Shown: positions 14,701-59,324, counted from the stretch's first letter. The stretch is 64,000 nucleotides of DNA from Octopus sinensis (GCF_006345805.1 NC_043003.1:105400001-105464000), one strand, 5' to 3'. Numbers and translations: made by a program. Notes: a model not told the origin generated them from the sequence alone.

Positions 14701-14705
14701 ATAGG

Positions 14706-14746
<41 letters not shown>

Positions 14747-15054
14747 AAAGAAGAAAAAGAAAATGGAGATTGGGCAGTTAACAATTGTTTACTATTAACA
14801 GCAAATTAATCATCGTTTGCAGCTGTTTCAATTAATACTCAGTAATTAATATTAAGTAAAATTAAATTTATGTGACCTGAGCATAATATCTTCAGAGGGA
14901 AAAAATATATCTTTGAATGTTTTATATGTGTTTATGGATTCATTATAGCAAACTGACTGATACGGTTTATGATTTGTACTGTTATATGTTCAGGTGAGGG
15001 GTTTACAGGTTGATTAGAGATAAGATAGAGTGGTAAATAGAATTAGAACTATGA

Positions 15055-23274: not shown

Positions 23275-23530
23275 TAGATAAACAGACAGACTGACAGAAA
23301 GAAAGAAAAACAGATAGACAGAGACAGATAGATAAACAGATAAATAGATAGATAAACAGACAGAGACAGACAGATAGCTAGATAGATGGATGGATGGACG
23401 GATGGACGGAGGGACAGACAGACAGACAAATAGATAGATAGATGGTTAAATAGATAGATAAATAGACAAACAAACAATAAATAGATAGATTGACAGACAG
23501 ACAGATGGCTAGCTAGACAGACAGACAGAC

Positions 23531-23586
<56 letters not shown>

Positions 23587-23685
23587 GATAGATAGATAGA
23601 TGGTTAAATAGATAGATAAATAGACAAACAAACAGATAAATAGATAGATTGACAGACAGACAGATGGCTAGCTAGACAGACAGAC

Positions 23686-23726
<41 letters not shown>

Positions 23727-23786
23727 TAGATAGATAGATAGATAGATAGATAAATAGATAGACAGATAGATAGATAAATAGATAGT

Positions 23787-23818
<32 letters not shown>

Positions 23819-23855
23819 TAGATAGATAGATAGATATATAGATAGATAGATAGAC

Positions 23856-23918
<63 letters not shown>

Positions 23919-23927
23919 TAGATAGAC

Positions 23928-23960
<33 letters not shown>

Positions 23961-23971
23961 TACAGACAGAC

Positions 23972-24006
<35 letters not shown>

Positions 24007-24035
24007 TATATAGATAGATAGATAGACAGACAGAC

Positions 24036-24134
<99 letters not shown>

Positions 24135-24147
24135 CAGATAGATAGAT
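23275..24147. repeat. about 870-bp (GATA)/(GACA)n tetranucleotide array
   Basis: Direct reading; includes an internal duplication (about 23425-23530 / 23590-23690). Confidence 0.97.
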
Positions 24148-24829: not shown

Positions 24830-25275
24830 GATGAAAAGTGGTTCAGTTGCTGATTATTTCCATATAAAGAATGGAACCAAGCAGGGTTCTGTAATGGTCC
24901 TTAACTTATTTGCAATCTATTTCTCAGCCTTGCTGCAAACTGCATCCAGGAATATCGATGAAATTGTGCATATCCAATTTAGATCAGATGGCAATCCACA
25001 ACACCCCAGGACCAGAACCAAATTCAGGGAACAACTTCTGTGAGAGTTTGCGTTTGTAGATGGTTGCGCTTTGATAGCATTTTCTCTACAGGACATCCAA
25101 GTATCAGTTGACTGTTTTGTTAATTCTGCCAAATTCTTTGGTTAAACCATCAGCTTGAAGAAGACTGAGGTATTGCACTAACCAGCGCCTGGTCGCCTTA
25201 ACACGATCCTATTGTCCTAAATGCTGTGCCAAAATTTTGCTACTTAGAAAGCATTCTGTCAAACAATATCTCTGA
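24830..25275 (+). mobile_element. RTE-clade (BovB-like) LINE RT fragment
   Basis: FHIKNGTKQGSVMVLNLFAIYFS...IQFRSDG...FAFVDGCALIA...FFG*TISLKKTEVL. Confidence 0.85.
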
Positions 25276-26058
25276 GAAACCATATTAAAATTTGTTGGAA
25301 ACCATTATGCTTAAAATTTGTATAATTTATTAAGTTCTACTGTCTAATTAATGCTGTTAATGACCTAACACTTGAACTAGGATCATTATTTTTAAAATAC
25401 GGATTTTGTCTTTAGGCGCGTTCTATAAATAAGCTCGTGAAAAGGGCGTAACGCTTACATATTTTGTAATTAACGAAATAATATGGATTACATAGGGACA
25501 TAACTACAGATGTGTGTCCTTTTATGCACTTTGTTTCTTTATGACTTTCTGAAAAATGCATATTTTTTATGAAATTTTCAACAAACATGTTGTGGATTAC
25601 GATTATGTCTGAATTTGATGTAGAAAAAAAAAAAAAAAGATTGAGGTGGGGTCAGAAAAATCACACACCTAGTCTTTATTTGCTCATACGTTCTAATGGG
25701 ATGTAGGAATAACCCGATCCCTTTTTGTTTCTCCATTAAAATCCGATATACACTATCTGAAACTGTATTTTTAAAAAATATTCATTTTCCCGTAAGTTAT
25801 GAGAAATCAAAGTCGAAGATGGGCAAGGCACACAACTGTACTAATGCCGATTTTATTTAGCTTTAATAACGTAATTAGCTTATCAAAAACGAATGGTCGT
25901 TCTTTTCTGCTCGTTTTTGCACTATTTCGATTCCCTGAAAAGGCAAGTGCTCGAAAATCTAATTTGAGTTTTTCGAACTCTCGGGTGTCACTGTGCACGC
26001 TTATCTCCCTTGCTGTCAAGCCGCTGACAAGTTGTGTCCCTTTATACTGATTCACTGC

Positions 26059-26100
26059 AAACGTGTAGCAGCTCTTCCTTGGCTCCTCGCTTCCAACAAA
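26059..26100 (+). promoter_or_regulatory. candidate non-coding first exon/TSS region of the C7orf50-like gene
   Basis: Pyrimidine-rich gctcttccttggctcctcgcttcc followed by a consensus donor AAA|GTAAGT at 26101 in a locally CpG-richer unique segment. Coding exon 1 has an acceptor at 33476, so it needs an upstream exon. The 5' boundary is a guess. Confidence 0.35.
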
Positions 26101-27642: not shown

Positions 27643-27864
27643 ATATGTAATTGTATATAAAATATATATATATTGAGCAAAGATATGTAATTGTATAAAA
27701 TATATATTGAGCAAAGATATGTAATTGTATATAAAATATATATATTGAGCAAAGATATGTAATTGTATAAAATATATATTGAGCAAAGATATGTAATTGT
27801 ATATAAAATATATATATTGAGCAAAGATATGTAATTGTATAAAATATATATTGAGCAAAGATGA
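27643..27864. repeat. minisatellite with alternating 34/38-bp units (72-bp higher-order repeat)
   Basis: gagcaaag core at 27675, 27709, 27747, 27781, 27819 and 27853. Confidence 0.95.
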
Positions 27865-33488: not shown

Positions 33489-33669
33489 ATGGCTAAAGAT
33501 AAAAAGACTAAAACTACTGAAGGATGCGAAAAAGCTGAAGTAAATTTGAATTCTTCAGCTGTTAACAAAAAACCCCAAAAGAAAGAACAAAAAGGTCCTA
33601 AAGAGAGTAAGGTAACTGAAGCACCGTCTCAAGGGAAAGATAAGAACGTCAATGCTGTACCAGCATCAG
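33489..33669 (+). CDS. C7orf50: C7orf50-like coding exon 1 (MAKDKKTK...NAVPAS)
   Basis: Acceptor ttttag ends 33476, ATG 33489, donor TCAG|gtaaat at 33670; 181 nt, phase 1. Confidence 0.75.
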
Positions 33670-36600
33670 GTAAATATACCATTTGTAGATTTTGATTTAC
33701 CAGTTTTCTATATAAAAAAAAGAGGGACTGTTTTATTACTGGTAAATGGAATTTGTTGTGTGTGAGAGAAAGAGAGGTAAAAGAAGTAGAACAAAAAAAG
33801 AAATATAACTGGCAAAGAATGAGCAATAAAAATACTGTGTTTACTCAAATATGAGTAGAACTGTTTTGTACTTGATTTTAACTGTTAAAAATGGGGTGCA
33901 ATTTATATACGGGACAAAGCTTTTAACTATGTGAGGAAAAATTTTGTAACACTAAATATGGGGTGTTATTTATACATGAACAAATATGTTTCAGATTAAA
34001 GTTGGTCCCTTTAGTGTTATCAATAATGTTGTTGTTTTTACAAAAATAAAATAACTAATCAAACAAATGAGCACAACATTAACACTGGCCCTTTATCTTG
34101 GAGCGTTATCTATGGGGTTTGCAGGAATTTGTTGCTAATTTCTCTTACCTAAGAAGAGATAATGGTTTGTGCTGATGATGGGCTTAGTGATGACAGTGTA
34201 ATGCATATCTCTGCTGTGAGAAATGATTGGAAGGGCAGCCCGTGGCTTTGAAATGCTGCCTCAGAAAAAAGAGAAAAAAACCTTGATGAGTACAATAACT
34301 ATGAAGATTGTCATGAGGCCTGCAAGGCTAAGCTGTTCCTTTAGAAGGGAAACGAGCCCTAAAATGTTGTTGCTGTTGTATATCCTTGACTGACTTCTAC
34401 CTTTTTTATTGATACTTGCATAGAAGCTGAAAGTGTTTGCTTTCTCAGTGGTTTGCACCTATGCTTCCCAGGTATCTCTTTCACCAAATATTCCCAGTAT
34501 CTCTAAAAACTCAATCTCTTGTTCATCTTTTGAGCCCATCCATACTAGAGACATCCATGTAATAACATCCAATTACTTCTTTGCAATGATATCACATTGA
34601 AATTCTCTGTACAACAGATACATCTCCACACATTCTGTTGTTGGTTAAGGGTCAAGATTTTAACTGATTTTTATGTTGAAAGATGTGAGAATATTACATT
34701 TTAAAAAAATGGACCTCTTGGATCAACTTTGTCTTTCGCTCTTTTCTGGGTTGTAGAAGGGAGCCAATCCAGGATAGTGAGTTGGCAGAACTGTCAGGGG
34801 ATTGGACAAGATGTGTTGAAGTACCTTTGTGGCTCTTTCCATTCTAATGGTAATATGTGCAGTAGAAGCCTTTAAGCAAAGCCTTTCCTTTGGACAACAA
34901 CTTCTGGCATGAAGATGGCATTCTTGCATTTATAGACAACTGCTAGTCTTTCATACAACAAAACGTTGACCAAGCCTGTACAGACATGACTTCTGGAAAT
35001 GTTAGATGTGCAGTGTGCTTGTAAAAGATTGTGATGGTTCGTGGCTTAGTGGTTAGGGCCCTAAGATCATGAGTTCGATTCTTGGTGGGGCACTGAATCC
35101 TTGAGCAAAACATTTTATTTTACATTGCCCCAAAATGAGTTGTGCCTATAATCCAAAGGGTCAGCCATGTCACATTCTGCGTTACACTGAATCTCACTGA
35201 GAACTACATTAGGGGGTACATGTGTCTGTGGAGTACTCAGCCACTTGCAAATTAATTTCACATGCAGGCTGTTCTGTTGATCGGATCAACTGGAACAGTT
35301 GTCATCATAACCGGCAGAGTGCCAATTCATTCACTTGTAAAAGATATCAATTATTATGTTCTTAGTGTAAGGTTTGTTTCATGACTACATCACAGATTAG
35401 AAAAGGATTATAAGGCGGTAAGCTGGCAGAAACGTTAGCATGCGGTATTTCGTCTGCCGCTACGTTCTGAGTTCAAATTCCGCCGAGGTCGACTTTGCCT
35501 TTCATCCTTTCGGGGTCGATTAAATAAGTACCAGTTACGCACTGGGGTCAATACAATCGACTTAATTCGTTTGTCTGTCCTTGTTTGTCCTCTCTGTGTT
35601 TAGCCCCTTGTGGGCAGTGAAGAAATAAGAAAAGGATGGTCATACCTGGAATGCTTTTGTTGCTTGCAATGTGTGCTGTCTACTAGTAGCTATGCAAACT
35701 GGTCAGAGCTGTGTCTAGCCAGGATCATTATAGAAACTGCTCACCTCTCAGTTGGTTTTCTGTTACACTATCAATAGGATTTTTATTTTCTCTGCTGTAT
35801 TATTTCACAAAACTTGGTAACATTTTTTAATGAAAGGCTTTTTGTTTTAGATGCAGAGAAGAAGAAGAAGCAGCAAAAGAAGAAACCGAATGGACTTAAG
35901 GCAGAAGACGGCAACACGCAAAATCATGTGGAAGGTGTGTGTGGGATTCGGTTTTCTTGTTACTAACATAATTGTTCAGTTCTATATGCCCACAGGCTTA
36001 TGGCATAGTACTTAAGAGCGCGGGCTTCTAACCCCAAGATTCCAAGTTCAATTCCAGGCAGTGACCTGAATAATAATAATAATAATAATATCTAAAAATA
36101 CCTTAGGAATGAGAACCCAGGTTCAAAATTTCCCCAAGGCTCCTGATGAAGGCTGGAGGGTATATCAGCTGAAACGTGTTAACAACAAACAAGATGAGGA
36201 CAAATATCCGTCAAATGTAAATAATGAACATAATTGTTGTTATTAACATTTTATTGTCCATTTTCAAAGTTAGCATGTAGTAGTAGTGGTTGTTTGACCT
36301 CAGATCAAGCCTGGGTGATCAATCAGAGCTAACTTGGGGGCTAAACAGCAACAATTGCTAACCCTTAAAAATAGACTGTCCCGGTTTTCTTTTAAGGCTT
36401 TAGTAGAACTACATTAGGCCTTTAGCATTTAAACTGGTCATGCCAGGCCCAAATATTTTGCTTGTTTGGTGTTTAAACTGGCCAGATCTGGCTTCTCACA
36501 TCAATCCCACAATGTCATTCTAAAAATATGCAAATCACATCATTGAAATTTTGTAGCTACAAGATAATAATGCATGATTAATTCCAAAACAAAATCAATA

Positions 36601-37129
36601 AATAGGCATAACATTTGGTAGAGTTATCTGAATGCTGGATTATCTTAATCCGTGGTCTTATATAATACAGTTTCATGTGCCCTGACAGATCACTGCTATT
36701 TCTAGCAGGTTGCATGACCACATAAGAGTCTCACTTGCTGACTCCTCCTAACCTAGGTTTATGCATCTCTTATACAGTTGAGTTTTTTTGTTATCTCATC
36801 TGTGACCATCATCATCATCATCGTCATCATCAACCACAAACGTCTTTGTATTTTTCTTTGTAGGAAATGTGAAAGCACCAAAACAAAAGAAATCTGAAGA
36901 GAATGCGGCGGGTGGTAGGTGGCTTTAACCATTTAAATATATTATTGGGAGTTTCTGTGAATAGGTGCAGGCATGGTTACACAGTTAAGAAGCTCACTTT
37001 GCAACCACGTGGTTTCAGGTTCAATCCCATTGTGTGGAACCTTTAGCCCCTGGCTAACCAATACTCCATGCAAATTTGATTGACAGAAACTGAAAGAAAG
37101 TTGTGCATTGTGTGTGTGTGTGTGTATAT

Positions 37130-41400: not shown

Positions 41401-44400
41401 AATACTATTATTATTATTATTAATTTCAATATTATTGTAGAACTTACTAAAAAGAAAACGCAAAAGCAACAGAAAGGTAAGAATTTTTAATGCTTTCTTT
41501 TATGAGTCTCTCATTTTGACCCTCTGGCATTTAAACTGGCCAGATCCAGCCTCTCACTTCTATCCTACAATGTCAGTCTAAAAACAAACAATCAAGTCGT
41601 TGAAATCTTGAAGCTACGAGACAGTGCAGAGCATTACACTTGACAGAATCACCTGAATGGGTAGCTTCTCCCTTCCATAACTGCTTTTGGAAATTGGTCT
41701 CAAGAAAAATCTATTAAGATAATGTAGAGTTTGGAGTTGCTAAAAGAAAGCAGGAGAAATGAACCATTCAAAAGAAGTCTTGTCACGATTGTCAGAAATA
41801 AGCCTATCAAGTTTCTGCAAGTGTGTTTTAGATTCTGGTATCAATGTCAGATTATCCTATCAGAATAGGATAATCTGTAGCCACAGAGAGGAGGATATGC
41901 ACATTCACCAAATCGTGACCCTTTAGTATTTAAACCAGCCATAATCGGTCAAAATATTTAACTTGTTTTATGTTCAGATCGGCCAGATCTGGCCTCTTGC
42001 ACCTCCTCTACAATGTCATTTCAAAAATAAACACTGACATCATTGAGTCTCAAAGCTATGGAGATAATGCGTGATGTAAAACAATGTGAATAAATAAACA
42101 TTACATTTAACAGCATAATCAAATGCTAAAAGGTTAAAGCTATAATGCTACAGAGCTGATGCTTAATAAGGTCAGTAGGCCTTTGTAGTCCCATGTCTTT
42201 TGGAATGTAATAGAAAGTTGGAACCAGTTTGGCTTTATTATTTTGTAATTTACGTCAGATATTTGTCAGTCTCATTCATAACAAACTGAAGCCATTGTGC
42301 CATAGTAACAATTGTGTTAATTGGTTTTATGCTATGAATATGTTTTTTTTTTCTTTCTTTCAGAAGCAACAACTCCTACACCAAAGACTGGGCAAACCAA
42401 TGCTTTAAAAGGTAAACAATTTTGTTGTTGTTAGATAATTTTAAATGTTAATGTTGCTTCTACATGTTGTGCCTAATTAGCACAAACGTCTTCGATGCAA
42501 CGGCTTCCACACTTTAGTGTTTTCTTTGTTGTTTTTCCTTTATAGAAAATGGGAAAAATAAGAAACATAATACCAGTGGAGGAAATGTGACAGATGGATC
42601 TACTGGAGAAGGTAGAATAATATTTAGCTACTGAAATATATATTGCTGCTTTAGAATTTTAATTTAATTTGCATTAAAAGAAAGCAAAACAAAAGTTCTA
42701 AGAAATTGATGGCATCAGTAAATTACTTCTAATTCAAGCCCCATTAATCAGGTTATCATCTCATTTGGTGCCTTAACCAGTTTGTTCTTATCTCATTTAT
42801 GTTGGCTGTGTGGTAAGTAGCTTGCTTACCAACCATTTGGTTCCGGGTTCAGTCCCACTGCGTGGCACCTTGGGCCGACCAAAGCCTTGTGAGCGGATTT
42901 GGTAGACGGAAACTGAAAGAAGCCTGTCGTATATATACATCATCATCATCCTCATTTAACGTCCGCTTTCCATGCTAGCATGGGTTGGACGGTTCAACTG
43001 GAGTCTGGGGAGCCCGAAGGCTGCACCAGGCCAGTCAGATCTGGCAGTGTTTCTACAGCTGGATGCCCTTCCTAACGCCAACCACTCCGAGAGTGTATAC
43101 ATATATGTGTGTATATGTTTGTATGGCTGTTTGTCACCCCAACATTGCTTGTCATCCAATGCTGGTGATTACGTCCCTGTAACTTAGTGGTTCAGCCTAA
43201 GAGACCGACAGAATAAGTACTAGGCTTACAAAGAATAAGTCCTGAGGTCTAAAGGTGGTGCTCCAGCATGGCCACAGTCAAATGACTGGAACAAGTAAAA
43301 GAATAAAAATCCACCCCCACTCCAGAACCAATTCTATTCCTCCTCATCTTCCTTCAGCCCTCTGCTCTTTCCCCTCTCCTATACTCAATCCTTAACACCT
43401 CCAGTCCTCTGTATCACTTCACCTATATTCCCTCCTGCTCTGTACCTTGAGGGTGTGTCCTAATACACATCCATCACTCTCTCTCTTAGCCTTTCTCTCT
43501 CTCCCTGCTTCTCCAACTGGGCTGTCCTTGTAGATAGGTGCCTTGTAACAAGGCACCTATTTCTGTTTCCCTCTGTTATTCTTTTAACTTCTCATCAACT
43601 GGCACAAAGCTACCTCCCTCAATATTGCTCCCACCCCTCACCCTCACTCGAGGGAACTTTGTTTTGTCTTGCAAGATTTTTTGGTGACCTTGCTGGGTAC
43701 CACATAAAAAACATCTAGAACTCTTTGTAAAATGTTTGGTATTAGGAAGGGCATCCAACCATAGAAACCATGTCTAAACAGACAATTGGAGCTTGATGCA
43801 GGCTTTTGATTTGCCAGCCTTTGTCAAACTGTCTGACCTGTGCCAGCAAGGAAAATGGATGTTAGATGGTGTTGATGACGATGTCCTGAGAAATATCAGA
43901 CCAAGAACGGTTGGTTAAATTCTGTTATGACATCTTAAGGTACAAATAAAATTGAGGATTGATGAGAAAACTCACTAAAGACACCTTAGATATTCACTTG
44001 GGGCTCAACTGTATAATGTGTTTATTTTGTATAAAGAATACAACATATTAACCCTTTTGTTACCAACCCAGCTGAAACCACTTCTGGCTCTGAGTACAAA
44101 TGTCTTGATTTCATAAGTTTTGAATTAAAATCTTCCACCAAACCTTACTCACAATTTATGTTCCTAACACTAGCTGTTATTTTACTAAATTCTTTGTTAT
44201 ATTTAGAATTAATTGAAAGAAACACAGAACATTTCAACAGAAATACAGTAACAAAAGGGTTAAGATCCACTGAAATTCTTAGCCATGCGATCTCCTTTCT
44301 GCTGCTCTGGGAATATTTATCAACAAACTGTATAGTGTGGGAAAAAAGCATTCATCGTCATCATCATGTCGCTTCTACATGTGTGTCTGATTAGCACAAG

Positions 44401-47400
44401 CATCTTTGATGCAACAGCTTCCATATTTTACTGTTTTCTTTTGTTGTTTTTGCTTTATAGAAAATGGGAAAAATAAGAAACATAATAGCAGTGGAGGAAA
44501 CGTGACACACACGGCAGTTTCATGTTTTTTTGTGTGTGCAAATTTGTGTATGTGGTGCTCCCTAGCAGATTACTAACGCAAGGGAGGATAATCATTCCTT
44601 CAACGTCTTTGGCGGAATTAGAAGATGGAATCAGAAAGTTAGCATTAAGGAAAATAATGCATTGGATCTGCATATTTATTTGATTTGTTGGTTTCTTGAT
44701 GTGAAATAATGTTCATATGAGTTGTTATAATGTTTCTGAATTGCTTGTTATCATTGTTCTATTCAGCAGAAATACACTTGTTGCTAACAATCATTGTAGA
44801 CTCAGTCAGTCAACAAATAAACTTCACGAGGTTTTGCAATGTTGTGAGAGAACATCCCTGTTATTATTTTTTATTTTTTTATTAGCGTTCAACTCAATCA
44901 CTTTGCCTGCATCAAATGGAATTTGGCAAGATCTGCTACCAAGATCCCATTCCATTATTTCTTTTGTTTGAGCCTGGTGCAGCCTACTGGCTTGCCAGTC
45001 CCCAATCAAACTGTCCAACCCATGCCAACATGGAAAACGGACGTTAAACAATGATGATGATGATGATTTTCTTATGCAATCCCATACTGTGTCATCCTGT
45101 ACCTTCCTAGAACTTTTTTGTCAGTCATTGTGATTATTATTGTTATCATTATTGTTATTATTATGATTTAATTTCAATATCATTGTAGAACCTGTTAAAA
45201 AGAAGACAAAACACAAGCAACCGAAAGGTAAGGTTTTCTTCTCCGTCTAATTTCATATCCTTTCATATTCATAATTGCTTTTGAAAATTAACTTCATCTG
45301 ATATTTGGGTCTCGGAATATATCTAATGAGTTCACAAATGGAGTTTGCTGCAGTTGCAGTGGAACAAGTGACTGAATACATTAAAAGAATCAATTTTTAT
45401 TAGTTAACTATTTGTCAGAAATGTGTTTGTGGAGGCACATGGCCTAGTGGTTAGAGCAGTGGACTCGCAGTCGAGGGATCGTGGGTTCGAATCTCAGACC
45501 GGGCGATGTGTGTGTTTATGAGCAAAACACCTAAGCTCAGAAGGTCATGGCGAAACTTCTGCTGACTCTTTCGCCACAACTTTCCTCCTGCATCTTGCAG
45601 CTCACCTGTGACGGACCAGCGTCCCATCCAGGTGGGGAACCTATATGCCAAGAAACCGGGAAACCGGCCCTAATGAGCCAGGTGTGGCAAGAGAACAGAA
45701 ATGTTTGCTTGCTTGCAGGTCGAGAGTGCCAGTATTTCTGGATCCAGTTGGCAATTAGTTTGTTGAAAGCTGCATATAATAAGTAGACAACACCAAACAA
45801 ACATGTAAACAGGATTTGTTATACCACACTTGGCATAAAAAAGATGTTCACACGTCATCATATATATATTTAGAATCAGCAAGATGAAAATAGTTTAATA
45901 CAACATGCTAAAAACTGCCTATCCAAAATTTAACACTGGGACTGGTTCTGGGTTTAACATAATGAATGTGTGTGTGTGTGGTGTCATGTCTGAAAGGAGT
46001 GTGTGTTCATAATGTACTCAAGAACATGCTGAATTTGGTGCTGAAAAGGGCTATTTATAAGTTATGTTTGACCCTTTCGTTACCAACCTGGCTGAAACTG
46101 CCTCTGGCTCTGAGTATAAATGTCTTGTTTTCATAAGTGTTGAATTAAAATCTTCCACCAAACCTTAGTCACAATTTATATTCCTAACACTAGCTTAATG
46201 ATAACTAAGTTATTTTACTAAATTCTTTGTTATATTTAAAGTAATTTCAAGAAACACAGAATCTCAAAATAAATACATTAACGAAAGGGATAAGGAAACT
46301 TCTAGAACAATCTGGAGAAGCCGTCTTGTGGACACTGGCCACTGGTAGGGCAATAGCTTGGCTGCACACCTGATCAAGCCATTGCTGTGTCATGACATGA
46401 AAGTCATAATATGGCAATGCAAGTTCACATCCTGCTACCAGTTCATCTACAATTTGTGAGAGATTGTTTTAGATTTTGTTAGCTGAATGTTTTAGGATTC
46501 CATGTAAAAGAAGAATATTTATGTGCTCAAAGGTGGTGGCCACAGCAGCATCTTTAAAGCTCCATTGCAACAGCATTGAGGCTTAGTAAGCAGTGATTGG
46601 TGAGCATTTTGTAAAATATTTATTTCTTTACTACCCACAAGGGGCTAAACACAGAGGGGACAAACAAGGACAGACAAAGGGATTAAGTCGATTACATCAA
46701 CCCAGTGTGAAACTGGTACTTTATTTATCGACCCTGAGATGATGAAAGGCAAAGTCGACCTTGGTGGAATTTGAACTCAGAATGTAACGACAGACGAAAT
46801 ACTGCTAAGCATTTCGCCCAGCGTGCTAACATTTCTGCCAGCTCGCCGCCTTTATAAAATATTGTCATCTCGTGTGCTGTGGATTGTAATGCAGTGTAGG
46901 AACAGATCCGACATATTTAGTTTGTAGGTGACCAAATTAAATATTTGTCTGGCTCTAGTTCTACTTGCTTGCTTCAGATGGTTGAATCTAGTATTCCATG
47001 GCAATAATTATGATAATTGGTGGTTTTTATGCTATAAATAAGTTTCTTTTCTGTTTCAGAAGAAACAACAACTACAGCAAAAGCTGGGCAAAACAATACC
47101 TCGTCAGCTTCAAAAGGTAAACAGTTTTATTTCTGTTAAATAACTTTAGATATTAACATTTGAAGCATTTGTGTCTAAATAGCAGAAACATCTTTGGTAT
47201 GACAATTTTCCATCTTTTATTTTTTCTTTGTAGAAAATGGTAAAAAGAAGAAATCCAATAACAGCGGAGAAACTTTGCAAAACGGATCTGCTGGAGAAGG
47301 TAGAAAACTTATTGAAATATTTTGTTGCTGTTTTAGAATTTTGATTTAGAATACATTAAAAGAAAAATATCAAATCAAAAACTCTAGATAAATTGTAGTT

Positions 47401-49679
47401 TTCTTTAAGATGGCCTTCAATTTGTATATCATTAAGTAAGAGCCAGCTCTGTCTGCAACATTTGACCTCTTGTTACTCTTTCTATATAAGGCAGTCCTCA
47501 ATTTCTAGGGCAAAGAGCACTCCTCTTATGTGAGATTGATGGAATTATGTCACTTTCTGATGATATATTTGTAAGAGGCAGCTCGAAGGCAATATGTGAA
47601 GTATTAGATTGTATAGTTAGATAACTTGTCCAGTGAAATATGTTTTCCTTTAAAACAACAAAATAGCAAAGGCAGAGAGCTTCTTGCAAAAAGGAAAAGT
47701 TTAAAAAGTATTTCAGGTGAATGGAGTAAAGAAGTGTGAATATGTGCAGAACCATTGATGTTGATTGTTGAGTGCAGACGGGTTGGTACTGTATAGACTC
47801 ACATTTCTTGACTACATTCACTCCTGACAATGGGCCTTTACACCTGAAATATATGAAGTTTAATGAAGTTGTCCCTTTTAGCATTGTAAGAAGCTCTCTG
47901 CCTTCGTTATTTTGTTATTCTACTTCTTTATCATATTGCTCCAAGGTGGCTGTCCTGCTCTTCTTTCTTAGCTTTGCTTATTTATAATATTATTCTTCAT
48001 TTCAATATCATTGTAGAACCTGTTAAAAAGAAGAAAAAACACAAGCAACAGAAAGGTGAGATTGCTCTTCCATTTCTAATTTGATGTCTGGTATCTTAAA
48101 AGTTTTCATGTTTTTTCACACCTGTTATGAGTTGGTATGGTTTGCTGCAGTTGATGGGAAAGATTTAAAAAGAAAAAAAACTCAAATTTTTGTTTGGTTA
48201 CGATTATCAGAAGTGAGTTCATCATCATCGTTTAACGTCCACTTTCCATGCTAGCATGGGTTGGACGATTTGACTGAGGACTGGTGAACGAGATGGCTGC
48301 ACCAGGCTCCAATCTGATCTGGCAGAGTTTCTACAGCTGGATGCCCTTCCTAATGCAACCACTCCGAGAGTGTAGTGGGTGCTTTTATGTGCCACTGGCA
48401 TGAGGGCCAGTCTGGCGGTACTGGCAACGGCCATGCTGAAATGGTGTCTTTAAAGTGCCACCTGCATAGGAGTCAGTCCAGCGGCACTGGCAACGACCTT
48501 GTTCGAATGTTATGTTCACATGCCACAGGCACAAGTGCTAGTAAGGTGACGCTGGTAACGATCACGCTCAAATGGTGCTTTTTACGTGCCATCAGCACGG
48601 AAGCCAAACAGCTGCTCTGGCAGTGATCCCGCTCGGATGGAGCTGTTTGCGCTCCACTGGCACGGGTGCGAGTCATTGAATTTGGTTCAATTTCAATTTC
48701 CCCACATCTATAATTTCTGAGAATAGTTTTAGATTTTCTTATCTAACTGTAATAGGATTTCATCTGAATATGGATCTTGCTCACAGCATATAAGGGAAGG
48801 ACCTGCACACTCCGCAAAATGCTAGCCCCGACATCTCTCAAACATTGCTGAGAATTAATAAGCAACAACTGATGAACATTCTGTAAATCATTATAGTCTT
48901 GTATTTTGCACAAATAATAGAAAGTTACAACAAATTTGTTTTACATATTTCATTTGTTGGTTACCGATGAAATACTGTCAGGTTATAATTCTACTCATTC
49001 ATAACAAACTGAAGCCATTGTGCCATAGTAACAATTGTGTTAATTGGTTTTATGCTATAAATATGTTTTTTTTCCTTTCTTTCAGAAGAAACAACTCCTA
49101 CACCAAAGACTGGGCAAAACAATGCTTTAAAAGGTAAACAATTTTGTTGTTGTTGTTAGATAATTTTAAATGTTAATGTTGCTTCTACATGTTGTGCCTA
49201 ATTAGCACAAACGTCTTCGATGCAACAGCTTCCACACTTTAGTGTTTTCTTTGTTGTTTTTCCTTTATAGAAAGTGGGAAAAATAAGAAACATAATACCA
49301 GTGGAGGAAATGTGACAGATGGATCTACTGAAATATATATTGCTGCTTTAGAATTTTAATTAAGAGAAAAAATGCAGCAAAATGAAAGCTCTAAAAAGTT
49401 GCTAAAAGTTATCATTAAGCTAGTGTAGAATTTGAATACCTTCAAGTAAATTGTATTTGATCCATCTGTGGACTTTGTGTCAGCTATCAAATAGTCTTTG
49501 ATTCATTATGAAATGGTCCAAAGCATTCTCTTATTTGATTTAATCACTTGCCTCTCAGCCAAATTTTCATTTTAATCCTTCTTTCACTTTTCTGTGCTAA
49601 TGTGTGTGTGTGTGTGTGTGTGCATCACAATATTGTCGCAAGATTTAGTTTTTTTCTCATCTCATCTTTACACAAGGTA

Positions 49680-49740
<61 letters not shown>

Positions 49741-52700
49741 GTTCTAGAGGGAGCTTTTTGGGAATATTTATAAACAAATTTTTTAATGTGTAAAACTGTT
49801 AACCTTCAGTCTTCGTTTTACATATTACAAACATATTTCTAATGTAATTTTCACATATGTATTACAAGCTGGTGGTGAGGGACACAAAAACTAAGGAAGC
49901 GTGACGACTAGATCTGATGGCTTCTTCTCTGTCACCTCTTCAGCTCCCTGTGGAACTTTTGACCCATCAACATGTCTTTGATTTCTTTCTTTTTGTCCTC
50001 CACAATCTTCAGGTACACTTCCCATTTTGTTTCAAAGGTTGCTGAGAGGGTTCTCAGCTTTACCCGTTCCTAGAAGATTAGGATCTTTAAGGATCATTAA
50101 ACACTGAGTTCTAATCCTGTACCCTGATACGAGAAGGTGCTCCAGCCTCTCCAGTAGTGCTTTAATCTGTGAATGTCCTCACTCTTCCTTTACTCTAAAT
50201 AAATGGACATCTTTTGCTTTCTGTGGTTTTCTTAGCAAGAAATGTTTCTCTGCTGTAGATCTGCTAATTCTATGAAGAAACCCCAACCTAAAGGATTTGG
50301 CTTGTGTTTAGCAGTCTTTTAATATTATGCCCACAAACAAGTTGTTGGTGTTATTTTTTTAAATGTCTGAGAGAGCAGCATACCCAGATGTGGAGATTCT
50401 GATAGCATAGGTTCTGAGATTATGATGGCATTGGTTCTAAACTTGTTCAGTGAATGTCCATTTTCCCTCCTGACATGTGTTGGTCTGACAGGAGCCAACA
50501 AGCCAGAGGACTGCACCAAGCTCCAATGTCTGTTTTTGCATCGTTTCTACAGCTGGATCCCTTCCTAACGCCAACCACTTCCCAGAATGTACTGAGTGCG
50601 ATCACCAAGTAATTTCCAGGACAAGATCCTCCTTCAACTGAGGGAGGAGTAAATTTGAGGGATATGGCTTTATGCCAGAAGGTGAGAGGTGTGCCTGAAA
50701 TGCCATCATTTACAGGACATTAACCACCAGTGTTGTTTCTTTCTTTAAACCTTTCCATTGCAATTAATGGTTTTTGTTACAGTTAATTTTGAAAATAGGA
50801 AAAATTTGTCACGGGATTGTCAATGGAGTTCCAACCAACCATAGGTTGGTCAAAGGATCATGACAATGAGAGATTAAAGTCTGAGAGAGGGACAGGAAGC
50901 TGGTGTTTTGCTGTAGGGAAGTGTATTGTTTTATAATTGTTTATTATTATATTTGAATTTCAATATCATTGTAGAGCCTGCCAACAAGAAGAAAAAACAC
51001 CAAAAAGGTAGGGTTTTATTCTTCTCAAATTCTATCCTCTTTCATGATTCTGTCGTTCAATTAGCATATTAAAGTTATATGTGATTTTTTTTGTTTTCAT
51101 GTTTACTTTTTTGTTCTTTTGGATATTAGCTCAACCGATATTTTGGTCTCAAAAAACAAATCTAATGAATTCAATATTGGTTTGCTACAGCTGAAGGGAA
51201 AAAATGAGATTCAACATTTGTTTGGTTACCCTTGTCAGAAATGAGTTCATCTTCAGTTTCTGAAAAGTTGTTTCAGATTTTGATTTCTGAATGTAAGAGA
51301 AATTCCATCTGAATATGGTAACAGGCACTGAGAGAAGGAGATGCACACTTACCAAGATATTGGCCTCAGCAGCATCTTTAAAGCTCCATTGCAACAGCAC
51401 CGATGCTTAGTAAGCAGTGATTGGTGAGCATTTTGTAAAATATTGTCATCTCGTGTGCTGTGGATTGTAATGCAGTGTAGGAACAGATCCGACATATTTA
51501 GTTTATAGGTGACCAAATTAGATATTTGTCTGGCTCTAGTTCTACTTGCTTGCTTGCAGATGGCTGAATCTAGTATTCCATGGCAATAATTGTGATAATT
51601 GGTGGTTTTTATGCTATAAATAAGTTTCTTTTCTGTTTCAGAAGAAACAACAACTACAGCAAAAGCTGGGCAAAACAATACTTCGTCAGCTTCAAAAGGT
51701 AAACAGTTTTATTTCTGTTAAATAACTTTAGATATTAACATTTGAAGCATTTGTGTCTAAATAGCAGAAACATCTTTGGTATGACAATTTTCCATCTTTT
51801 ATTTTTTCTTTGTAGAAAATGGTAAAAAGAAGAAATCCAATAACAGCGGAGAAACTTTGCAAAACGGATCTGCTGGAGAAGGTAAAAAACTTATTGAAAT
51901 ATTTTGTTGCTGTTTTAGAATTTTGATTTAGAATACAATTGCAGCATGGAAGGTGTTTGTAAGTCATTTAAGAAACACACAAAAACCGTTCGATTCACTT
52001 TAACATTTAAGTTTAATTTGTCAAAATATTTTCGGCGCTTTAAGACCGCGACCTGTTCACTGTGCTATGCAAGTACATCTCCGATTTAGAATACATTAAA
52101 AGAAAAATATCAAATCAAAAGCTTTAATAAATGAATGAAGTTATTGTTAAGGTAGCCTTTAATTAGTGTCAAATAATCACTGATCTGTCACCAAACACTA
52201 CAAGTCATCATCTCATTTGATGTGTCCTTGAATAGTTTCTGTATCTACAAAATTTAATGTTCATCCTGGGTCGTCAAGTTGCATGGAATTGATTGCCTTA
52301 GAAACAGCAAAGTATTTTATTGGGACTTTTGCCACTTATCGCTTTGTATGAGGTTGAGTATACCTCATACTGCTTCTGTGTTTAGTGAAGCTACTAATGG
52401 GTAGGTCAGATTTTCTAACTCTTCCACTGCTAAAAACAAAGAAACAATAATTATGCAGGGTTCTTAATTTCCGTTCCCAAAGATTTCTTAAATAGTTTGA
52501 AGGATAATTCTTCTTCCTCTATTTAGTGTCAGACAAAAGTTACTAATCTGTTTTCCGTTAGTAAAAAAGCTAGATTTATTTAGATAACTTATTTTACAAC
52601 TAAGTATGCGGCCCTTGTTATATTTTCCTTTCATTCAGAGGAAACAATGAATCATAAAAACCAAGAAATAGTTCAGACCATTTTCAATGTTATCAACCTG

Positions 52701-55700
52701 ATGAGATTTGTGCCTAACGATCCTAAGCATCTGCTTCAATATTTTACTATTTTCTATGATTTGTACAGAGAGTGCAAAAAAGAGGAAACGCAAGATCAGT
52801 GAAGAAAGTGTGAAAAGTGGTGATGGTAGGTTGCTTGTTCATTGGAATATATTGCTGGCATTGTTTTACTTTACTATTGTGTGATTTAATATACGGAAAC
52901 ACTGGACGCGGTCAATGAAATTGACTGGGAGAAAGCTATTTTAGCCCTGGATTGCCATACCTAACCTGCCACATTCTCACATTAAATAAGCAAAGTGTAA
53001 AAAATAAAAAGAAATAGGATATATATATATATGTGATGTATGGTTAAAGAATTTCTATAACATTCCCCACCCCACCCTAATATAATTTGATTCATTTGCA
53101 ATCTAATTGATTATATTGAAGATGAGCATTAATTACAGTGTAAAGTTAACTAGTTATGCTTCCGTAAAGTTGAGGGTTTTAATTCAGTTTTTTTTTTTTT
53201 TTTTTTTGTAATTTTGTGGTGAGTTGATTAATGTCCAAAATTCATTTTTATCCATTTATTAGTCACAGTACAATGGCAAGCGAGAGCATTTCTGTTTAGT
53301 TTTGTTTCATGGAAGTTTAGGAGTTTCACTTGAAGCTGGTGCTTTATATTTCTGCTTTAATGATGGAACATTAGCTTCAAATAAGATTGTTTTCTCCAAA
53401 GTTATGGCTTGTGCTTGTTGTTAGTAAAATAAAATAGACATTAGAATTTGGTATTAAAAGTGACTCAGATACTAAGAGAGTAGCTAAACCCTTTCGTTAC
53501 CAACCCGGCTGAAACCATCTCTGGCTCTGTAGTACAAATGTCTTGTTTTCATAAGTTTTGAATTAAAATCTTCCACCAAACCTTAGTCACAATTTATGTT
53601 CCTAACACTAAGCTTAATGATAACTAAAGTACTTAAAGTAATTGAAAGAAATACAGAGCATCTCAAAATACATAGAGTAACGAAAGGGTTCAAGCAAAAA
53701 TCAGTCTTTTCTATAGATTCTTTATTTTCAGGTGTTTTTGTTTTCTTTTTCTTTGCTTTTGCTAGTTTTATTTGGCCAAAGTTGATTTATATTCACCATT
53801 ATTGTAGTATTGTTAGAGATTATCCTTGTTTACCCCAGCTGAACAAGAGTTGAGGATGCTTATGATCAAAAGCATTTTCTCATGACCATCCAGTCTTTAT
53901 AGGGGGGTGGGGTGTCTCAGATTACCATATGAGATGCATCTCAATTTCTAAAGCAGATATGCAGGAAAAACGGTTTTAGTAGATTAAAGCATATAATCAT
54001 CCTTATCATCATTTAACGTCCGTTGCCCATGCTGGCATGGGTTGGACAGTTTGACCAGGGCTACTAAGCTGAGAGACTGCACCAGCCTCCAGTCTGATTT
54101 AGCATGATTTCTATGGATGGATGCCTTCTTAATACCAGAGAGTCTCAATTTTACATATAGGGCCCAGGGGATTTTCTTCAGCAAGAAAGTATGCCTTATA
54201 TGCCATCAATTACGGGACATTGTTTCTTTCTTTAAACCTTTTTGTCACCATATTTGAGTTAATCCTTGTTTATCCCAGCTGAAATCACAATCAAAATCAA
54301 ATTCGCTGATGTGGCTGATGACAGCACCACCTGAATGGCATGGGTGCCAGTGGAACGTTAAAGCACCATCCGAGTGTGATCGTTGCCAAGGCCGCTGACT
54401 CAGTCATGTGTTGGTGGCACATAAAAGGCAACATTTGAGCGTGATTGTTGCCAGTATTGCCACTGCAGCTGGACTGGCTCCTGTGCAGGTGACACCTAAA
54501 AGACACCATTTGAGCATGGCTGTTGCCAGTACCGCCTGACTGGCCCTTGTGCCAGTGGCATGTAAAAAGCACCCACTACACTCTTGGAGTGGTTGGCATT
54601 AGGAAGGGCATCCAGCTGTAGAAACTAACTCTGTCCGATCAGATTAGAGCCTGGTGCAACCATCTGGTTCGCCAGTACTCAGTCAAACCATCCAACCCAT
54701 ACCAGCATGGAAAGCGGGCGTTAAACGATGATGATGATTTCTGTTGCAATAAACTGCTTTTGTTACAGTTAATTTTGAAAATATGAAGAATTTAATAAAA
54801 TTACTTTGTTGTAATAAAACTGGCGTTTGGAACATGGAATTTTGGTGGAAGAAGGTTTTAATTCCGAACATTTTTAAAACGGAGTTTGGGTCATAAAATC
54901 AGAAAGTGTTTCAGGTGAGTTGGTATGAAAAGGGTCAAAGATGGTTGGGTGTGGGTCGAGGATCAAACAACCATCCAGAGACTTCTTTATTAACTCATTT
55001 GTGAGGGTGTAGTGTGTTGGTGTAACAGACCTAAAATCTTCAGTGAGTGTTTGCTGGGAGTCAGTTGTAAGCTAAGATGTAGAGTGATGATGATGATGAT
55101 GTAGATTGATGATGATATGTGGTTAAAGTTTGTAATTTAGTGGAAAATGTCAGGAAAAACTGGTTCATATTTCATTATATAGGTTTATTGATCATTGGGA
55201 AATATTTGATCAGTTAGGTCTGTTAATTGAGACTTGAACCTGGACACCAACTGGACGGTTGATTGCTTTCTACAGCAAAGCTTTTTGTTGGTTCTTTCAG
55301 ACAAGAATAAAACCACCAAACCAAAAGGTGCACAAAGTGACAACTCACCTGCAGCAAAAGGTAATCGGTGTTGGTGCTTGATTGACCATTTTCCTGTTCA
55401 CAACTATTTCCACAGTAATTCTTACTCTGGAACTGTCTCCATTCTATGTAAATTCTTTCAGGAAACAATACAGTTGTTCTAAAAATGAAGGAGCCATTAT
55501 GTGAATTTCTTCATGTTGTTTCAGTATCAAAGTGTTTGTAGGACTCCACCGCTAGGAAAATAGGTTCTTCCAATTCATAACAGAAAATCCGTTTGTCTAT
55601 TTCTGAAAACTCTTGGCAGTCTTTGGTATTTTTGCATAAATTTCTCCCTCTTCAATATTGATGCTTTTATTTATCTTCAATAAAACTGAAACAGCGTCTT

Positions 55701-58700: not shown

Positions 58701-59290
58701 ATATGTGGCCCTTGAAGAAACACATCCAAATTGGCACCCATCAGCTGTCTGCAGCTTTCCTTTGATTACACCACTTCTCCTCGCCATCCAGAGCCACATC
58801 CTTCTACTCTCCTCTCCAAGCTGTATTTGCTTTAGTTTCAACACACAGTCTCAGATGAAATCCCTTGACAGCTTCATGCATTTTCAAAATATAATTTCTG
58901 TTTTAGAGAAAAAGAAGAAGAGATCTAAGAGAAGGAAGGGTTCGAAGGCTGATGATAAACCCAAAGAGATGATTTTGGGTGAAGATGAAGCAACTACAGA
59001 AAAAAAGGCGAAGCAATTCTTAAATGTTTGGTACACAAATAAGACTGAATGGAATTTTGTAAAAGCCCGTCAGAACTGGTTGGTTCATCATATGTATGAT
59101 CCTGAAAAGGTCAGTTTTCATGACATTTTAACTTCCTTGCTTTAACCATTACAAAATGGTCACAGTTAGTGATTTATTAATTACCATTGAATATTTAATA
59201 TGTACAGGTGTAGCCCTCTGGTGTAGGAATTTGCTTCCCAACCACATGGTTTCAGGTTCAGGCCCAGTGTGTGACACTTTGAGCAAGTGT

Positions 59291-59324
<34 letters not shown>

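What the first reader, a model, noticed from the sequence alone, without database searches (positions are those of the whole stretch)
41441..51881. C7orf50/WKF gene expanded by a tandem A-B-C exon-triplet array with higher-order (1=3, 2=4) structure
Seen: four successive units of exon A (33-39 nt, EPVKKK..KQ.K), B (48 or 57 nt, EETT...GQNN...K) and C (66 nt, ENGK.KK.N.SG...GS.GE), each with family-specific splice-site flanks. B1/C1 recur as B3/C3; B2/C2 recur as B4/C4 (C2=C4; B2 and B4 differ by one silent base). Known: human C7orf50 (about 194 aa, from memory) and yeast Rbp95 are nucleolar/RNA-binding WKF proteins with a basic N-terminus. Inference: this lineage has roughly doubled the protein by serially duplicating a Lys-rich / Thr-Ser spacer module, giving a polycationic disordered arm that could tune rRNA binding or nucleolar partitioning. 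I do not know of a description of this.
Basis: partly seen in the sequence, partly recalled or inferred. Interest (0 to 1): 0.9.

Follow-up and report, generated by a model that had tools for sequence, protein, structure and literature searches.

The report
Repeated mini-exons in octopus C7orf50 gene
The octopus version of the ribosome-assembly protein C7orf50 has a tail lengthened by repeated copies of three tiny exons that are spliced in different combinations, which is a real but fairly ordinary case of exon duplication in a disordered protein region.

Summary
The exon array is real. Eleven intact A/B/C mini-exons lie at 41441-51881 on the + strand. All are phase 1-1, multiples of 3 nt, and have AG/GT borders. 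They sit between three N-terminal exons (33489-36914) and the WKF-domain exons (58907-60514; Pfam PF10180, E=2.7e-22).

- C3 is dead. A 28-bp deletion removed its 3' end and donor.
- A truncated C copy lies at 44461-44507.
- A fifth C-like exon lies at 52769-52825.
- The 1=3, 2=4 identity covers only the B-intron-C tracts. The A exons are only 62-76% alike.

This pattern points to old units with later gene conversion, not a recent two-unit duplication.

The genome statistics match Octopus sinensis. The O. vulgaris reference carries the same architecture, so it is not an assembly artefact. Five public O. vulgaris isoforms (320-426 aa) use subsets of these exons.

The protein is not doubled relative to other molluscs, whose orthologues are 308-353 aa. 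Several other WKF proteins also have periodic Lys-patch repeats.

A splice-tunable basic arm for RNA binding or nucleolar targeting is plausible from the yeast and human literature, but it is untested here.

This is a new member of a known kind, of modest interest.

The parts
33489..33669 (+). Coding exon 1 (ATG at 33489; MAKDKK...AVPAS), ends in phase 1
   Evidence: tblastn of P0001 matches at 100%. Sequence read.
35851..35934 (+). Exon 2 (DAEKKKKQQKKKPNGLKAEDGNTQNHVE), 84 nt, phase 1-1
36864..36914 (+). Exon 3 (GNVKAPKQKKSEENAAG), 51 nt, phase 1-1
41441..41476 (+). A1 (ELTKKKTQKQQK)
   Evidence: Present in all five O. vulgaris isoforms.
42364..42411 (+). B1 (EATTPTPKTGQTNALK)
   Evidence: Present in all five isoforms.
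42546..42611 (+). C1 (ENGKNKKHNTSGGNVTDGSTGE). O. vulgaris reads ESGK at its start.
   Evidence: Present in isoforms P0001 and P0003.
44461..44507 (+). C1', a truncated C copy. It comprises the acceptor plus the first 47 nt, within a 142-bp partial duplicate at 44366-44507. It is 89.5% identical to C1 and C3. It is a pseudo-exon.
   Evidence: Also present in O. vulgaris.
45189..45227 (+). A2 (EPVKKKTKHKQPK)
   Evidence: isoforms P0002, P0003, P0005.
47060..47116 (+). B2 (EETTTTAKAGQNNTSSASK)
47234..47299 (+). C2 (ENGKKKKSNNSGETLQNGSAGE). Intact here, but 1 nt shorter (A5 to A4) in the O. vulgaris reference.
48017..48055 (+). A3 (EPVKKKKKHKQQK)
   Evidence: isoforms P0001, P0002.
49086..49133 (+). 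B3 (EETTPTPKTGQNNALK)
49271..49329 (+). C3 remnant. A 28-bp deletion removed the last 7 nt and the GT donor. It is skipped in both isoforms that use unit 3.
   Evidence: The same deletion is in O. vulgaris.
50975..51007 (+). A4 (EPANKKKKHQK)
   Evidence: isoforms P0001, P0002, P0004.
51642..51698 (+). B4 (same peptide as B2, one silent difference)
51816..51881 (+). C4 (nucleotide-identical to C2). It is spliced directly to the first WKF exon in all annotated isoforms.
52769..52825 (+). C0, a candidate fifth C-like exon (ESAKKRKRKISEESVKSGD). It is 57 nt, phase 1-1, with good AG/GT sites. It is in no annotated isoform.
   Evidence: (family D1, 66%). It is 137/137 identical in O. vulgaris.
58907..59109 (+). 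WKF exon 1 (EKKKKRSKRRKG...WNFVKARQNWLVHHMYDPEK)
   Evidence: (PF10180, 78.8 bits).
59665..59812 (+). WKF exon 2 (IPDTTFQTLLKYLAGMKGRSREE...)
60459..60514 (+). Last coding exon (GEPGLIQRTRAEQVIQIL, stop at 60512-60514)
42268..42640 (+). Type-1 B-C high-identity tract. It is about 98% identical to 48991-49340. Four paralogue differences are fixed in both species. The flanks fall to 40-70%.
46536..47355 (+). Type-2 B-C high-identity tract. It is 98-100% identical to 51360-51937, with two fixed paralogue differences. It is interrupted by a SINE-like insertion at 46621-46850 (target-site duplication AAAATATT) that is absent from unit 4.

Best explanation
What it is. This is the single-copy octopus orthologue of C7orf50/Rbp95, a WKF-domain ribosome-biogenesis and RNA-binding protein. 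Its disordered, Lys-rich N-terminal arm is encoded by a string of short symmetric exons.

How it arose. A three-exon unit was tandemly duplicated, introns included, to four units. The unit consists of:
- A, a Lys patch that looks like an NLS;
- B, a Thr/Ser/Pro spacer;
- C, an Asn/Gly/Ser/Lys spacer.

The units are old: the A exons and intron patches are now only 62-83% alike. Later, shortly before the O. sinensis/O. vulgaris split, the B-intron-C tracts of units 1 and 3, and of units 2 and 4, were homogenised. The most likely mechanism is non-allelic gene conversion over tracts of about 0.35-0.6 kb. Some copies have since decayed (C3, C1', and possibly C2 in O. vulgaris).

How it works. Every exon from exon 1 to the first WKF exon is phase 1-1 and a multiple of 3 nt. 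Every exon ends in G and the next begins with A[A/G]. Any subset therefore splices in frame with Glu at each junction. The array behaves as a set of cassette exons, and annotated isoforms carry 80-148 aa of it.

Inferred function, not shown. Splicing sets the length, net charge (+10 to +18) and number of Lys patches of a flexible arm. That arm would contribute to non-specific RNA binding and to nuclear or nucleolar targeting of the WKF domain.
For: Gene identity:
- Pfam WKF match at 78.8 bits against a cut-off of 25.
- A single WKF locus in the genome.

Exon anatomy:
- Splice sites, phases and junction bases read directly.
- My rough estimate from base composition: 185 codons open in one frame at about 7% stops per codon gives about 1e-6 by chance.

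Reality of the array:
- The same architecture, including dead C3, C1' and C0, is present in an independent assembly of the sister species.
- Paralogue-specific fixed differences are shared by both species.
- The B-C block is confined to this locus in 2.72 Gb.

Transcription and splicing:
- Five O. vulgaris isoforms combine the exons differently and join them to the WKF exons.
- Alternative forms in that annotation come from PASA runs on Iso-Seq and RNA-seq (PMC10700109).

Old units with later conversion:
- A exons with flanks are 62-76% alike, and A2-A3 is the closest pair.
- Type-1 versus type-2 B-C blocks are about 70% alike.
- The 1/3 and 2/4 tracts are 98-100% alike, with identity dropping sharply into weakly homologous flanks.

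Functional inference:
- The N-terminal fragment 1-85 of yeast Rbp95 binds RNA more strongly than its WKF part (PMC9508819).
- Human C7orf50 needs a Lys-rich NLS and NoLS, and acetylation of K71/72/76 releases it from the nucleolus (PMC13178565).
- An AF2 single-sequence model gives no secondary structure in residues 1-263 and helices only in 264-370 (low confidence).
Against: - No read-level data were examined. Exon usage rests on deposited gene models.
- B2/B4 and C2/C4 cannot be told apart at the protein level.
- The O. vulgaris reference C2 is 65 nt, so full use of C2 is undocumented there.
- P0002 has an odd 5' end and a cryptic B2-to-C2 junction, and may be a model artefact.
- Sequence constraint is weak. 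For C1 versus C2, pN/pS is about 0.7; for B1 versus B2 it is about 0.8. Exons are no better conserved than the intron between them.
- Three C copies are decaying. Much of the array may therefore be tolerated rather than selected.
- Orthologues are closer than paralogues, so no conversion since the species split is detectable. With only two close species, conversion versus small patch duplication is inferred from identity profiles only.
- No localisation or binding data exist for any cephalopod.
Confidence: 0.8

Rival explanations
1. The (1=3, 2=4) pattern reflects a recent tandem duplication of a whole two-unit block (A1B1C1-A2B2C2 giving A3B3C3-A4B4C4), that is, a true higher-order repeat.
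For: The B-C blocks pair 1 with 3 and 2 with 4 at 98-99% identity. The order of unit types alternates.
Against: - A1/A3 (68%) and A2/A4 (67%) are no closer than any other A pair, and A2/A3 is the closest at 76%.
- The offsets differ, at 6723 versus 4581 bp.
- The sequence between the B-C blocks is not alignable apart from short patches of 72-83% identity.
Confidence: 0.1
2. The array is essentially neutral baggage. Exon duplicates in a disordered region are tolerated, the isoform variety is splicing noise, and there is no tuned function.
For: - pN/pS is about 0.7-0.8, and exon identity is no higher than intron identity.
- C3 is dead and C1' truncated.
- C2 is frame-broken in the O. vulgaris reference.
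- Total protein length matches relatives that lack the array.
- Similar periodic arms arise repeatedly in the family.
Against: - Eleven exons keep their frame, length class and both splice sites.
- Composition classes (K patch versus T/S spacer versus N/G/S spacer) are kept across paralogues that are about 30% diverged.
- Every isoform keeps A1-B1 and ends with a B-C pair.
- Lys patches are functional in human and yeast relatives.
Confidence: 0.35
3. The array is an assembly artefact (haplotig or collapsed-repeat misassembly), or consists of exonised transposon fragments.
For: Near-identical B-C copies could in principle come from misassembly. The introns are full of SINE-like repeats.
Against: - Two independent assemblies of two species agree exon by exon, including the deletions and insertions.
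- Paralogue-specific substitutions are shared between the species.
- The B-C block has only four copies genome-wide, all in this locus.
- Isoforms contain both B1 and B3, which differ in sequence.
Confidence: 0.02

Closest known systems
C7orf50 (human; also called cholesin) and Rbp95/Ycr016w (yeast), the WKF-domain family (Pfam PF10180)
   Same: - A C-terminal helical WKF domain with the W-x-F...RQxWL...MYD motif.
- A basic, Lys-rich N-terminal arm.
- A single-copy gene.
- In the relatives the N-arm binds RNA (Rbp95 1-85) and carries the NLS and NoLS (C7orf50).
   Different: - The human and frog proteins are about 194-197 aa with a short arm.
- Here the arm is 185-290 aa. Part of it is built from duplicated 33-66-nt cassette exons spread over 10 kb.
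- No function has been tested in cephalopods.
Scallop 'cholesin-like' isoforms X1/X2 (Argopecten irradians), and other WKF proteins with periodic arms (P0087, P0112, P0069, P0095, P0134)
   Same: - Tandem repetition of a 'Lys patch + acidic/Ser-Thr spacer' module in the N-arm.
- In the scallop, isoforms differ by one module.
- The intron position inside the WKF domain is shared (...K|IP...).
   Different: - The scallop repeat (38 aa) lies inside one large exon of a compact 2.7-kb gene.
- The modules are not homologous in sequence to octopus A/B/C.
- These are independent expansions with a different gene architecture.
Treacle (TCOF1) central repeat domain
   Same: A disordered nucleolar ribosome-biogenesis factor whose 11 central repeats correspond to successive exons 6A-16 (PMC9133508). 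Some of these exons are used alternatively.
   Different: - An unrelated protein.
- Its repeats are about 60-70 aa acidic/basic CK2-site units, one exon per repeat. The octopus unit is split into three mini-exons.
- No near-identical tract pairs are known to me.
Tandem exon duplication with alternative splicing in general (for example the titin PEVK and nebulin triplicated exon blocks, and schistosome micro-exon genes); cited from my own knowledge, not checked here
   Same: Short symmetric exons are duplicated in tandem, with blocks of several exons re-duplicated or homogenised to about 99%. Exon skipping yields length variants of a disordered or elastic segment.
   Different: - Different proteins and functions.
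- The octopus exons are not mutually exclusive, since several units co-occur in one isoform.
- They are longer than typical schistosome micro-exons.

Membership tests
WKF / C7orf50 / Rbp95 family (PF10180) | Match to the WKF domain model above Pfam's gathering score | tested here: met
   78.8 bits against a cut-off of 25, E=2.7e-22, full model 1-62/63. The exon-wise genome hit is also over the cut-off.
WKF / C7orf50 / Rbp95 family (PF10180) | Architecture: basic low-complexity N-arm, then the WKF helices, then a short C-terminal ...R.R..Q.LQ-like tail | tested here: met
   Spliced model and isoforms. The tail GEPGLIQRTRAEQVIQIL aligns with the tails of scallop, frog and other relatives. pI is about 9.9 and Lys content 20-22%.
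WKF / C7orf50 / Rbp95 family (PF10180) | Orthology (single copy, best hits are C7orf50 homologues) | tested here: met
   One WKF locus in G000. Hits are named C7orf50 homolog or cholesin-like in scallops and WKF domain-containing in vertebrates.
WKF / C7orf50 / Rbp95 family (PF10180) | Nucleolar localisation, rRNA / pre-60S association | not testable with these tools
   Known only for human and yeast members.
Tandemly duplicated cassette-exon array | Exon copies homologous together with their flanking intron sequence, in tandem and in the same orientation | tested here: met
   The repeat finder families D1, D4, D5 and D7. Self-BLAST. Intron patches 46444-46503, 48705-48773 and 51248-51318 are homologous.
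Tandemly duplicated cassette-exon array | Symmetric phase and lengths divisible by 3, so that any subset keeps the frame | tested here: met
   All lengths (36, 48, 66, 39, 57, 66, 39, 48, 33, 57, 66, and C0 at 57) are divisible by 3. Every exon ends in G and the next starts with AA or AG.
Tandemly duplicated cassette-exon array | Transcripts that include different subsets | tested here: inconclusive
   Five deposited isoforms with different subsets come from a transcript-based pipeline. No reads were inspected. B2/B4 and C2/C4 are indistinguishable in protein. P0002 is a doubtful model.
Mutually exclusive exon cluster (Dscam-type) | Exactly one exon of the cluster per transcript | tested here: not met
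   P0001 and P0002 contain two to four A exons and several B and C exons together.
Concerted evolution by non-allelic gene conversion | A high-identity tract with sharp borders embedded in older, lower-identity homology | tested here: met
   Units 1/3: 92-100% identity over 42268-42590, falling to 40-76% outside. Units 2/4: 90-100% over 46536-47340, falling to 72% or less upstream and 82% then 35-45% downstream.
Concerted evolution by non-allelic gene conversion | Discordant relationships of neighbouring segments | tested here: met
   The B-C blocks group as (1,3)(2,4). Among the A exons A2-A3 is closest, and A1/A3 and A2/A4 are not close.
Concerted evolution by non-allelic gene conversion | Paralogues more alike within a species than orthologues between species (ongoing conversion) | tested here: not met
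   Orthologues are 99.0-99.4% identical. Paralogues are 94-95% identical over the full type-1 block (about 98% in its core) and 98.6-99.4% for type 2. There are 4 and 2 fixed paralogue differences shared by both species. The events therefore predate the roughly 2.5-My species split.

The most novel reading that the evidence does not exclude
The array is an octopod-specific, selectively maintained 'valency dial'. Regulated combinatorial splicing of 11-12 symmetric mini-exons, possibly steered by the inverted SINE pairs that bracket exon groups, sets the number of Lys patches on a ribosome-biogenesis factor. That in turn sets its nucleolar partitioning or rRNA affinity in a tissue- or stage-specific way. 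Gene conversion keeps alternate units interchangeable.
Probability: 0.15. Interest if true: 0.55.

Novelty: new member of a known kind. Interest (0 to 1): 0.3.

Why it matters
It is a clean, well-delimited example of how a disordered, charged protein arm grows. The steps are tandem duplication of a multi-exon unit, symmetric phases that make every copy a free cassette, patchy gene conversion, and birth-and-death of copies.

It sits in a conserved ribosome-biogenesis factor whose Lys patches have measurable roles in human and yeast. It could therefore serve as a natural series of arm-length and charge variants for testing how the valency of basic patches affects nucleolar partitioning.

It does not reveal a new kind of system. 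The exons are already in public O. vulgaris gene models. The protein is no longer than its molluscan relatives.

Tried and rejected
- **Assembly artefact.** Rejected by comparison with the O. vulgaris reference locus L001.
- **Transposon-derived exons.** Rejected: the B-C block has four copies genome-wide, all in this locus.
- **Recent two-unit block duplication.** Rejected on A-exon identities and identity profiles.
- **Further cryptic A/B/C copies in the window.** A PAM30 tblastn found only the listed copies plus C1' and C0.
- **O. bimaculoides orthologue.** Only a 100-aa N-terminal UniRef fragment exists (P0016, 89% identical). Its locus is not on record, so the age of the array could not be tested.
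- **Nearest non-octopus relatives (P0006, P0017).** These are transcript contigs from unnamed samples, so the species is unknown. They lack the array. The alignment of their disordered arms to octopus is not reliable, so homology of C or C0 to their 'KENDSKK...' and 'KKRKRK' segments is only a lead.
- **Pfam scan of other long ORFs in the window.** It gave nothing significant.
- **AF2 single-sequence model.** Low confidence throughout (mean pLDDT 45.5). It is used only as weak support for disorder, so no fold search was run.
- **Literature.** No paper combines C7orf50 and octopus.

Full report
**1. Source of the window**

G000 has 2,719,151,902 bases in 13,516 contigs, and the window is C7:105400001-105464000. 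These are the figures given for the Octopus sinensis assembly GCA_006345805.1 in PMC10700109.

The window is collinear with the O. vulgaris reference (GCA_951406725.2, OX597820.1:115790105-115848447, locus L001). Mismatch is about 1-1.5%. That fits the roughly 2.5-My split quoted in the same paper.

**2. Observation check**

Reading the sequence and checking borders by script confirms eleven intact exons on the + strand:
- A1 41441-41476, B1 42364-42411, C1 42546-42611
- A2 45189-45227, B2 47060-47116, C2 47234-47299
- A3 48017-48055, B3 49086-49133
- A4 50975-51007, B4 51642-51698, C4 51816-51881

All have AG/GT borders and lengths divisible by three. All are in phase 1. Each ends in G and the next begins with AA or AG, so every junction codon is Glu whichever exon follows.

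C2 and C4 are identical in nucleotides. B2 and B4 differ by one silent base.

The twelfth exon, C3, is a remnant. A 28-bp deletion between two CTACT repeats removed its last 7 nt and the donor.

One is a truncated C copy at 44461-44507, inside a 142-bp partial duplicate. The other is a fifth, divergent C-like exon, C0 (52769-52825, ESAKKRKRKISEESVKSGD), with good splice sites.

The B-intron-C block occurs only four times in the 2.72-Gb genome, all in this locus. Type 1 matches type 2 at E=3.6e-42.

**3. The gene**

Downstream exons 58907-59109 and 59665-59812 encode a full WKF domain (PF10180, 78.8 bits, E=2.7e-22). It is the only WKF locus in the genome.

Mapping the O. vulgaris proteins gives the remaining exons:
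- exon 1, 33489-33669 (start codon at 33489)
- exon 2, 35851-35934
- exon 3, 36864-36914
- last exon, 60459-60514

Every junction from exon 1 to the first WKF exon is phase 1.

**4. Expression evidence**

The protein database holds five O. vulgaris isoforms of this gene, 320-426 aa long. Decomposed into exons:

| Isoform | Exon content |
|---|---|
| P0004 | A1-B1-A4-B-C |
| P0005 | A1-B1-A2-B-C |
| P0003 | A1-B1-C1-A2-B-C |
| P0001 | A1-B1-C1-A3-B3-A4-B-C |
| P0002 | alternative 5' end, then A1-B1-A2-B2(5' part)/C2(3' part)-A3-B3-A4-B-C |

In each isoform the final C is joined directly to the first WKF exon. None contains C3 or C0.

According to PMC10700109, alternative forms were added by PASA from Iso-Seq and RNA-seq.

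Caveats:
- I saw no reads.
- B2/B4 and C2/C4 give the same peptides.
- In the O. vulgaris reference C2 is 65 nt (A4 instead of A5). This is either a real frameshift or an ONT homopolymer error. The terminal C of those isoforms must therefore be C4, and P0002's cryptic GT...AG junction bypasses the defect.

**5. Not an artefact**

L001 carries every element, including the C3 deletion, C1', C0, the SINE-like insertion in unit 2 and the 146-bp insertion in unit 4. The paralogues carry fixed differences shared by both species: four between B-C blocks 1 and 3, and two between blocks 2 and 4.

**6. History**

Homology between units is confined to three places:
- the A exons with about 50-60 bp of flank (62-76% identity, A2-A3 closest)
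- short patches in the A-to-B introns (72-82%)
- the B-intron-C block (type 1 versus type 2 about 70%)

Against that old background, two tracts stand out. Region 42268-42590 is 92-100% identical to unit 3. Region 46536-47340 is 90-100% identical to unit 4. Both show sharp falls into weakly homologous flanks.

A recent two-unit block duplication would have made A1 resemble A3 and A2 resemble A4, which is not seen. I therefore read the '1=3, 2=4' pattern as gene-conversion tracts laid on an old four-unit array.

Orthologues (99.0-99.4%) are closer than paralogues, so the events predate the species split. The fixed differences are 0.4% and 1.2%, against about 1.2% interspecies divergence. That places the events only a few million years earlier, though this is a rough estimate from very small counts.

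The SINE-like insertion at 46621-46850 (target-site duplication AAAATATT) followed the homogenisation and preceded speciation.

**7. Constraint**

For C1 versus C2, pS is about 0.30 and pN about 0.21. For B1 versus B2, pS is about 0.21 and pN about 0.17. Exon identity is no higher than that of the intron between them.

Sequence constraint is therefore weak, as expected for a disordered region. Frame, splice sites, length class and composition class are kept in eleven exons.

Net charge by exon class:
- A exons: +4 to +6
- B exons: 0 to +1
- C exons: 0 to +1

The array adds 80-148 aa and +10 to +18 charge in the annotated isoforms. With all eleven exons it would add 185 aa.

An AF2 single-sequence model shows no secondary structure before residue 264 and helices only in the WKF part. 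Its confidence is low.

**8. Comparison with relatives**

- Frog C7orf50 is 197 aa.
- Scallop orthologues are 308-353 aa.
- The two closest non-octopus proteins, P0006 and P0017, are 333 and 311 aa. They are transcript contigs of unknown species, 58-60% identical in the WKF part, and have long Lys-rich arms but no A-B-C array.

The octopus protein is therefore not doubled relative to molluscan relatives. The array seems to occupy the place of other Lys-rich sequence.

A scan of 163 family members for internal repeats found periodic 'Lys patch + spacer' modules in several others, with periods of 26-44 aa. One is Argopecten, whose X1 and X2 isoforms differ by one 38-aa module. That module lies within a single large exon of a 2.7-kb gene.

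Expansion of this arm is thus recurrent in the family. The mini-exon architecture is what is particular to octopus.

O. bimaculoides is represented only by an N-terminal fragment whose locus I could not fetch. The age and taxonomic spread of the array remain untested.

**9. Likely function (inference)**

- In yeast Rbp95 the N-terminal 85 residues bind RNA more strongly than the WKF part (PMC9508819).
- In human C7orf50 a Lys-rich NLS and NoLS are required for nuclear and nucleolar localisation.
- Acetylation of three NoLS lysines releases the human protein from the nucleolus (PMC13178565).

The A exons (for example PVKKKKKHK) resemble such patches. The most likely role of the array is to vary the length, charge and number of basic patches of a flexible arm through cassette splicing.

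An equally serious alternative is that most of this variation is tolerated noise. Weak constraint and decaying copies point that way.

**10. Verdict**

This is a real, transcribed tandem exon array in the octopus C7orf50 orthologue. It is, however, an instance of a well-known process: tandem exon duplication, cassette splicing and gene conversion in a disordered region. The closest analogy is the one-exon-per-repeat organisation of the nucleolar protein treacle (PMC9133508). The exons are already in public gene models, though I found no description in the literature searched.

Noticed in passing
L001 31968-32042 (O. vulgaris) versus window 47227-47302: The O. vulgaris reference has a 1-nt shorter A-run in exon C2 (65 nt, frame-breaking). 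The window's C2 and both C4 copies have the 5-A form. This is either a lineage-specific pseudo-exon or a homopolymer error of the ONT-based assembly. It probably shaped the deposited isoform models.
   Followed up: partly
window 42938-43031 / 44967-45065 / 48204-48493 / 54457-54752: Inverted copies of a SINE-like repeat bracket groups of array exons. One pair encloses A2 to A3, and another encloses B3 to C0. Such pairs could form intronic dsRNA that favours block skipping or A-to-I editing. This is untested.
   Followed up: no
window 46621-46850 and 51938-52082: Two insertions with target-site duplications (AAAATATT and GATTTAGAATACA) lie within or next to the near-identical B-C tracts. Both are shared with O. 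vulgaris. They give a relative order of conversion, then insertion, then speciation.
   Followed up: partly
window 52769-52825: C0 is an unannotated, intact, phase-compatible Lys/Arg-rich exon candidate (ESAKKRKRKISEESVKSGD). It is 137/137 identical between the two species. Its KKRKRK motif resembles a segment in the arm of the nearest non-octopus relatives, so it may be an ancestral exon that is now skipped.
   Followed up: partly
window 24958-25050 and 26023-26100: Isoform P0002 starts from two upstream exons (MKLCISNLDQ...) about 8 kb before the normal start. This is an alternative promoter or a model artefact. The first of these exons differs at 2 of 31 residues from O. vulgaris.
   Followed up: no
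window 13455-14788 (- strand): Long open frames of 237 and 328 aa look like a decayed retroelement polymerase by eye, but gave no Pfam hit. High GC skew spans 12-16 kb.
   Followed up: partly
window 23322-24147; 27643-27862: An (AGAT)n microsatellite of about 208 copies, and a 72-nt tandem repeat of three copies.
   Followed up: no
L012 (Argopecten irradians CM084268.1:24036263-24041000): The scallop orthologue is a compact four-exon, 2.7-kb gene. Its 38-aa duplicated module sits inside one exon. Isoform X2 must remove one copy by an internal splice. The intron inside the WKF domain is at the same position as in octopus.
   Followed up: partly
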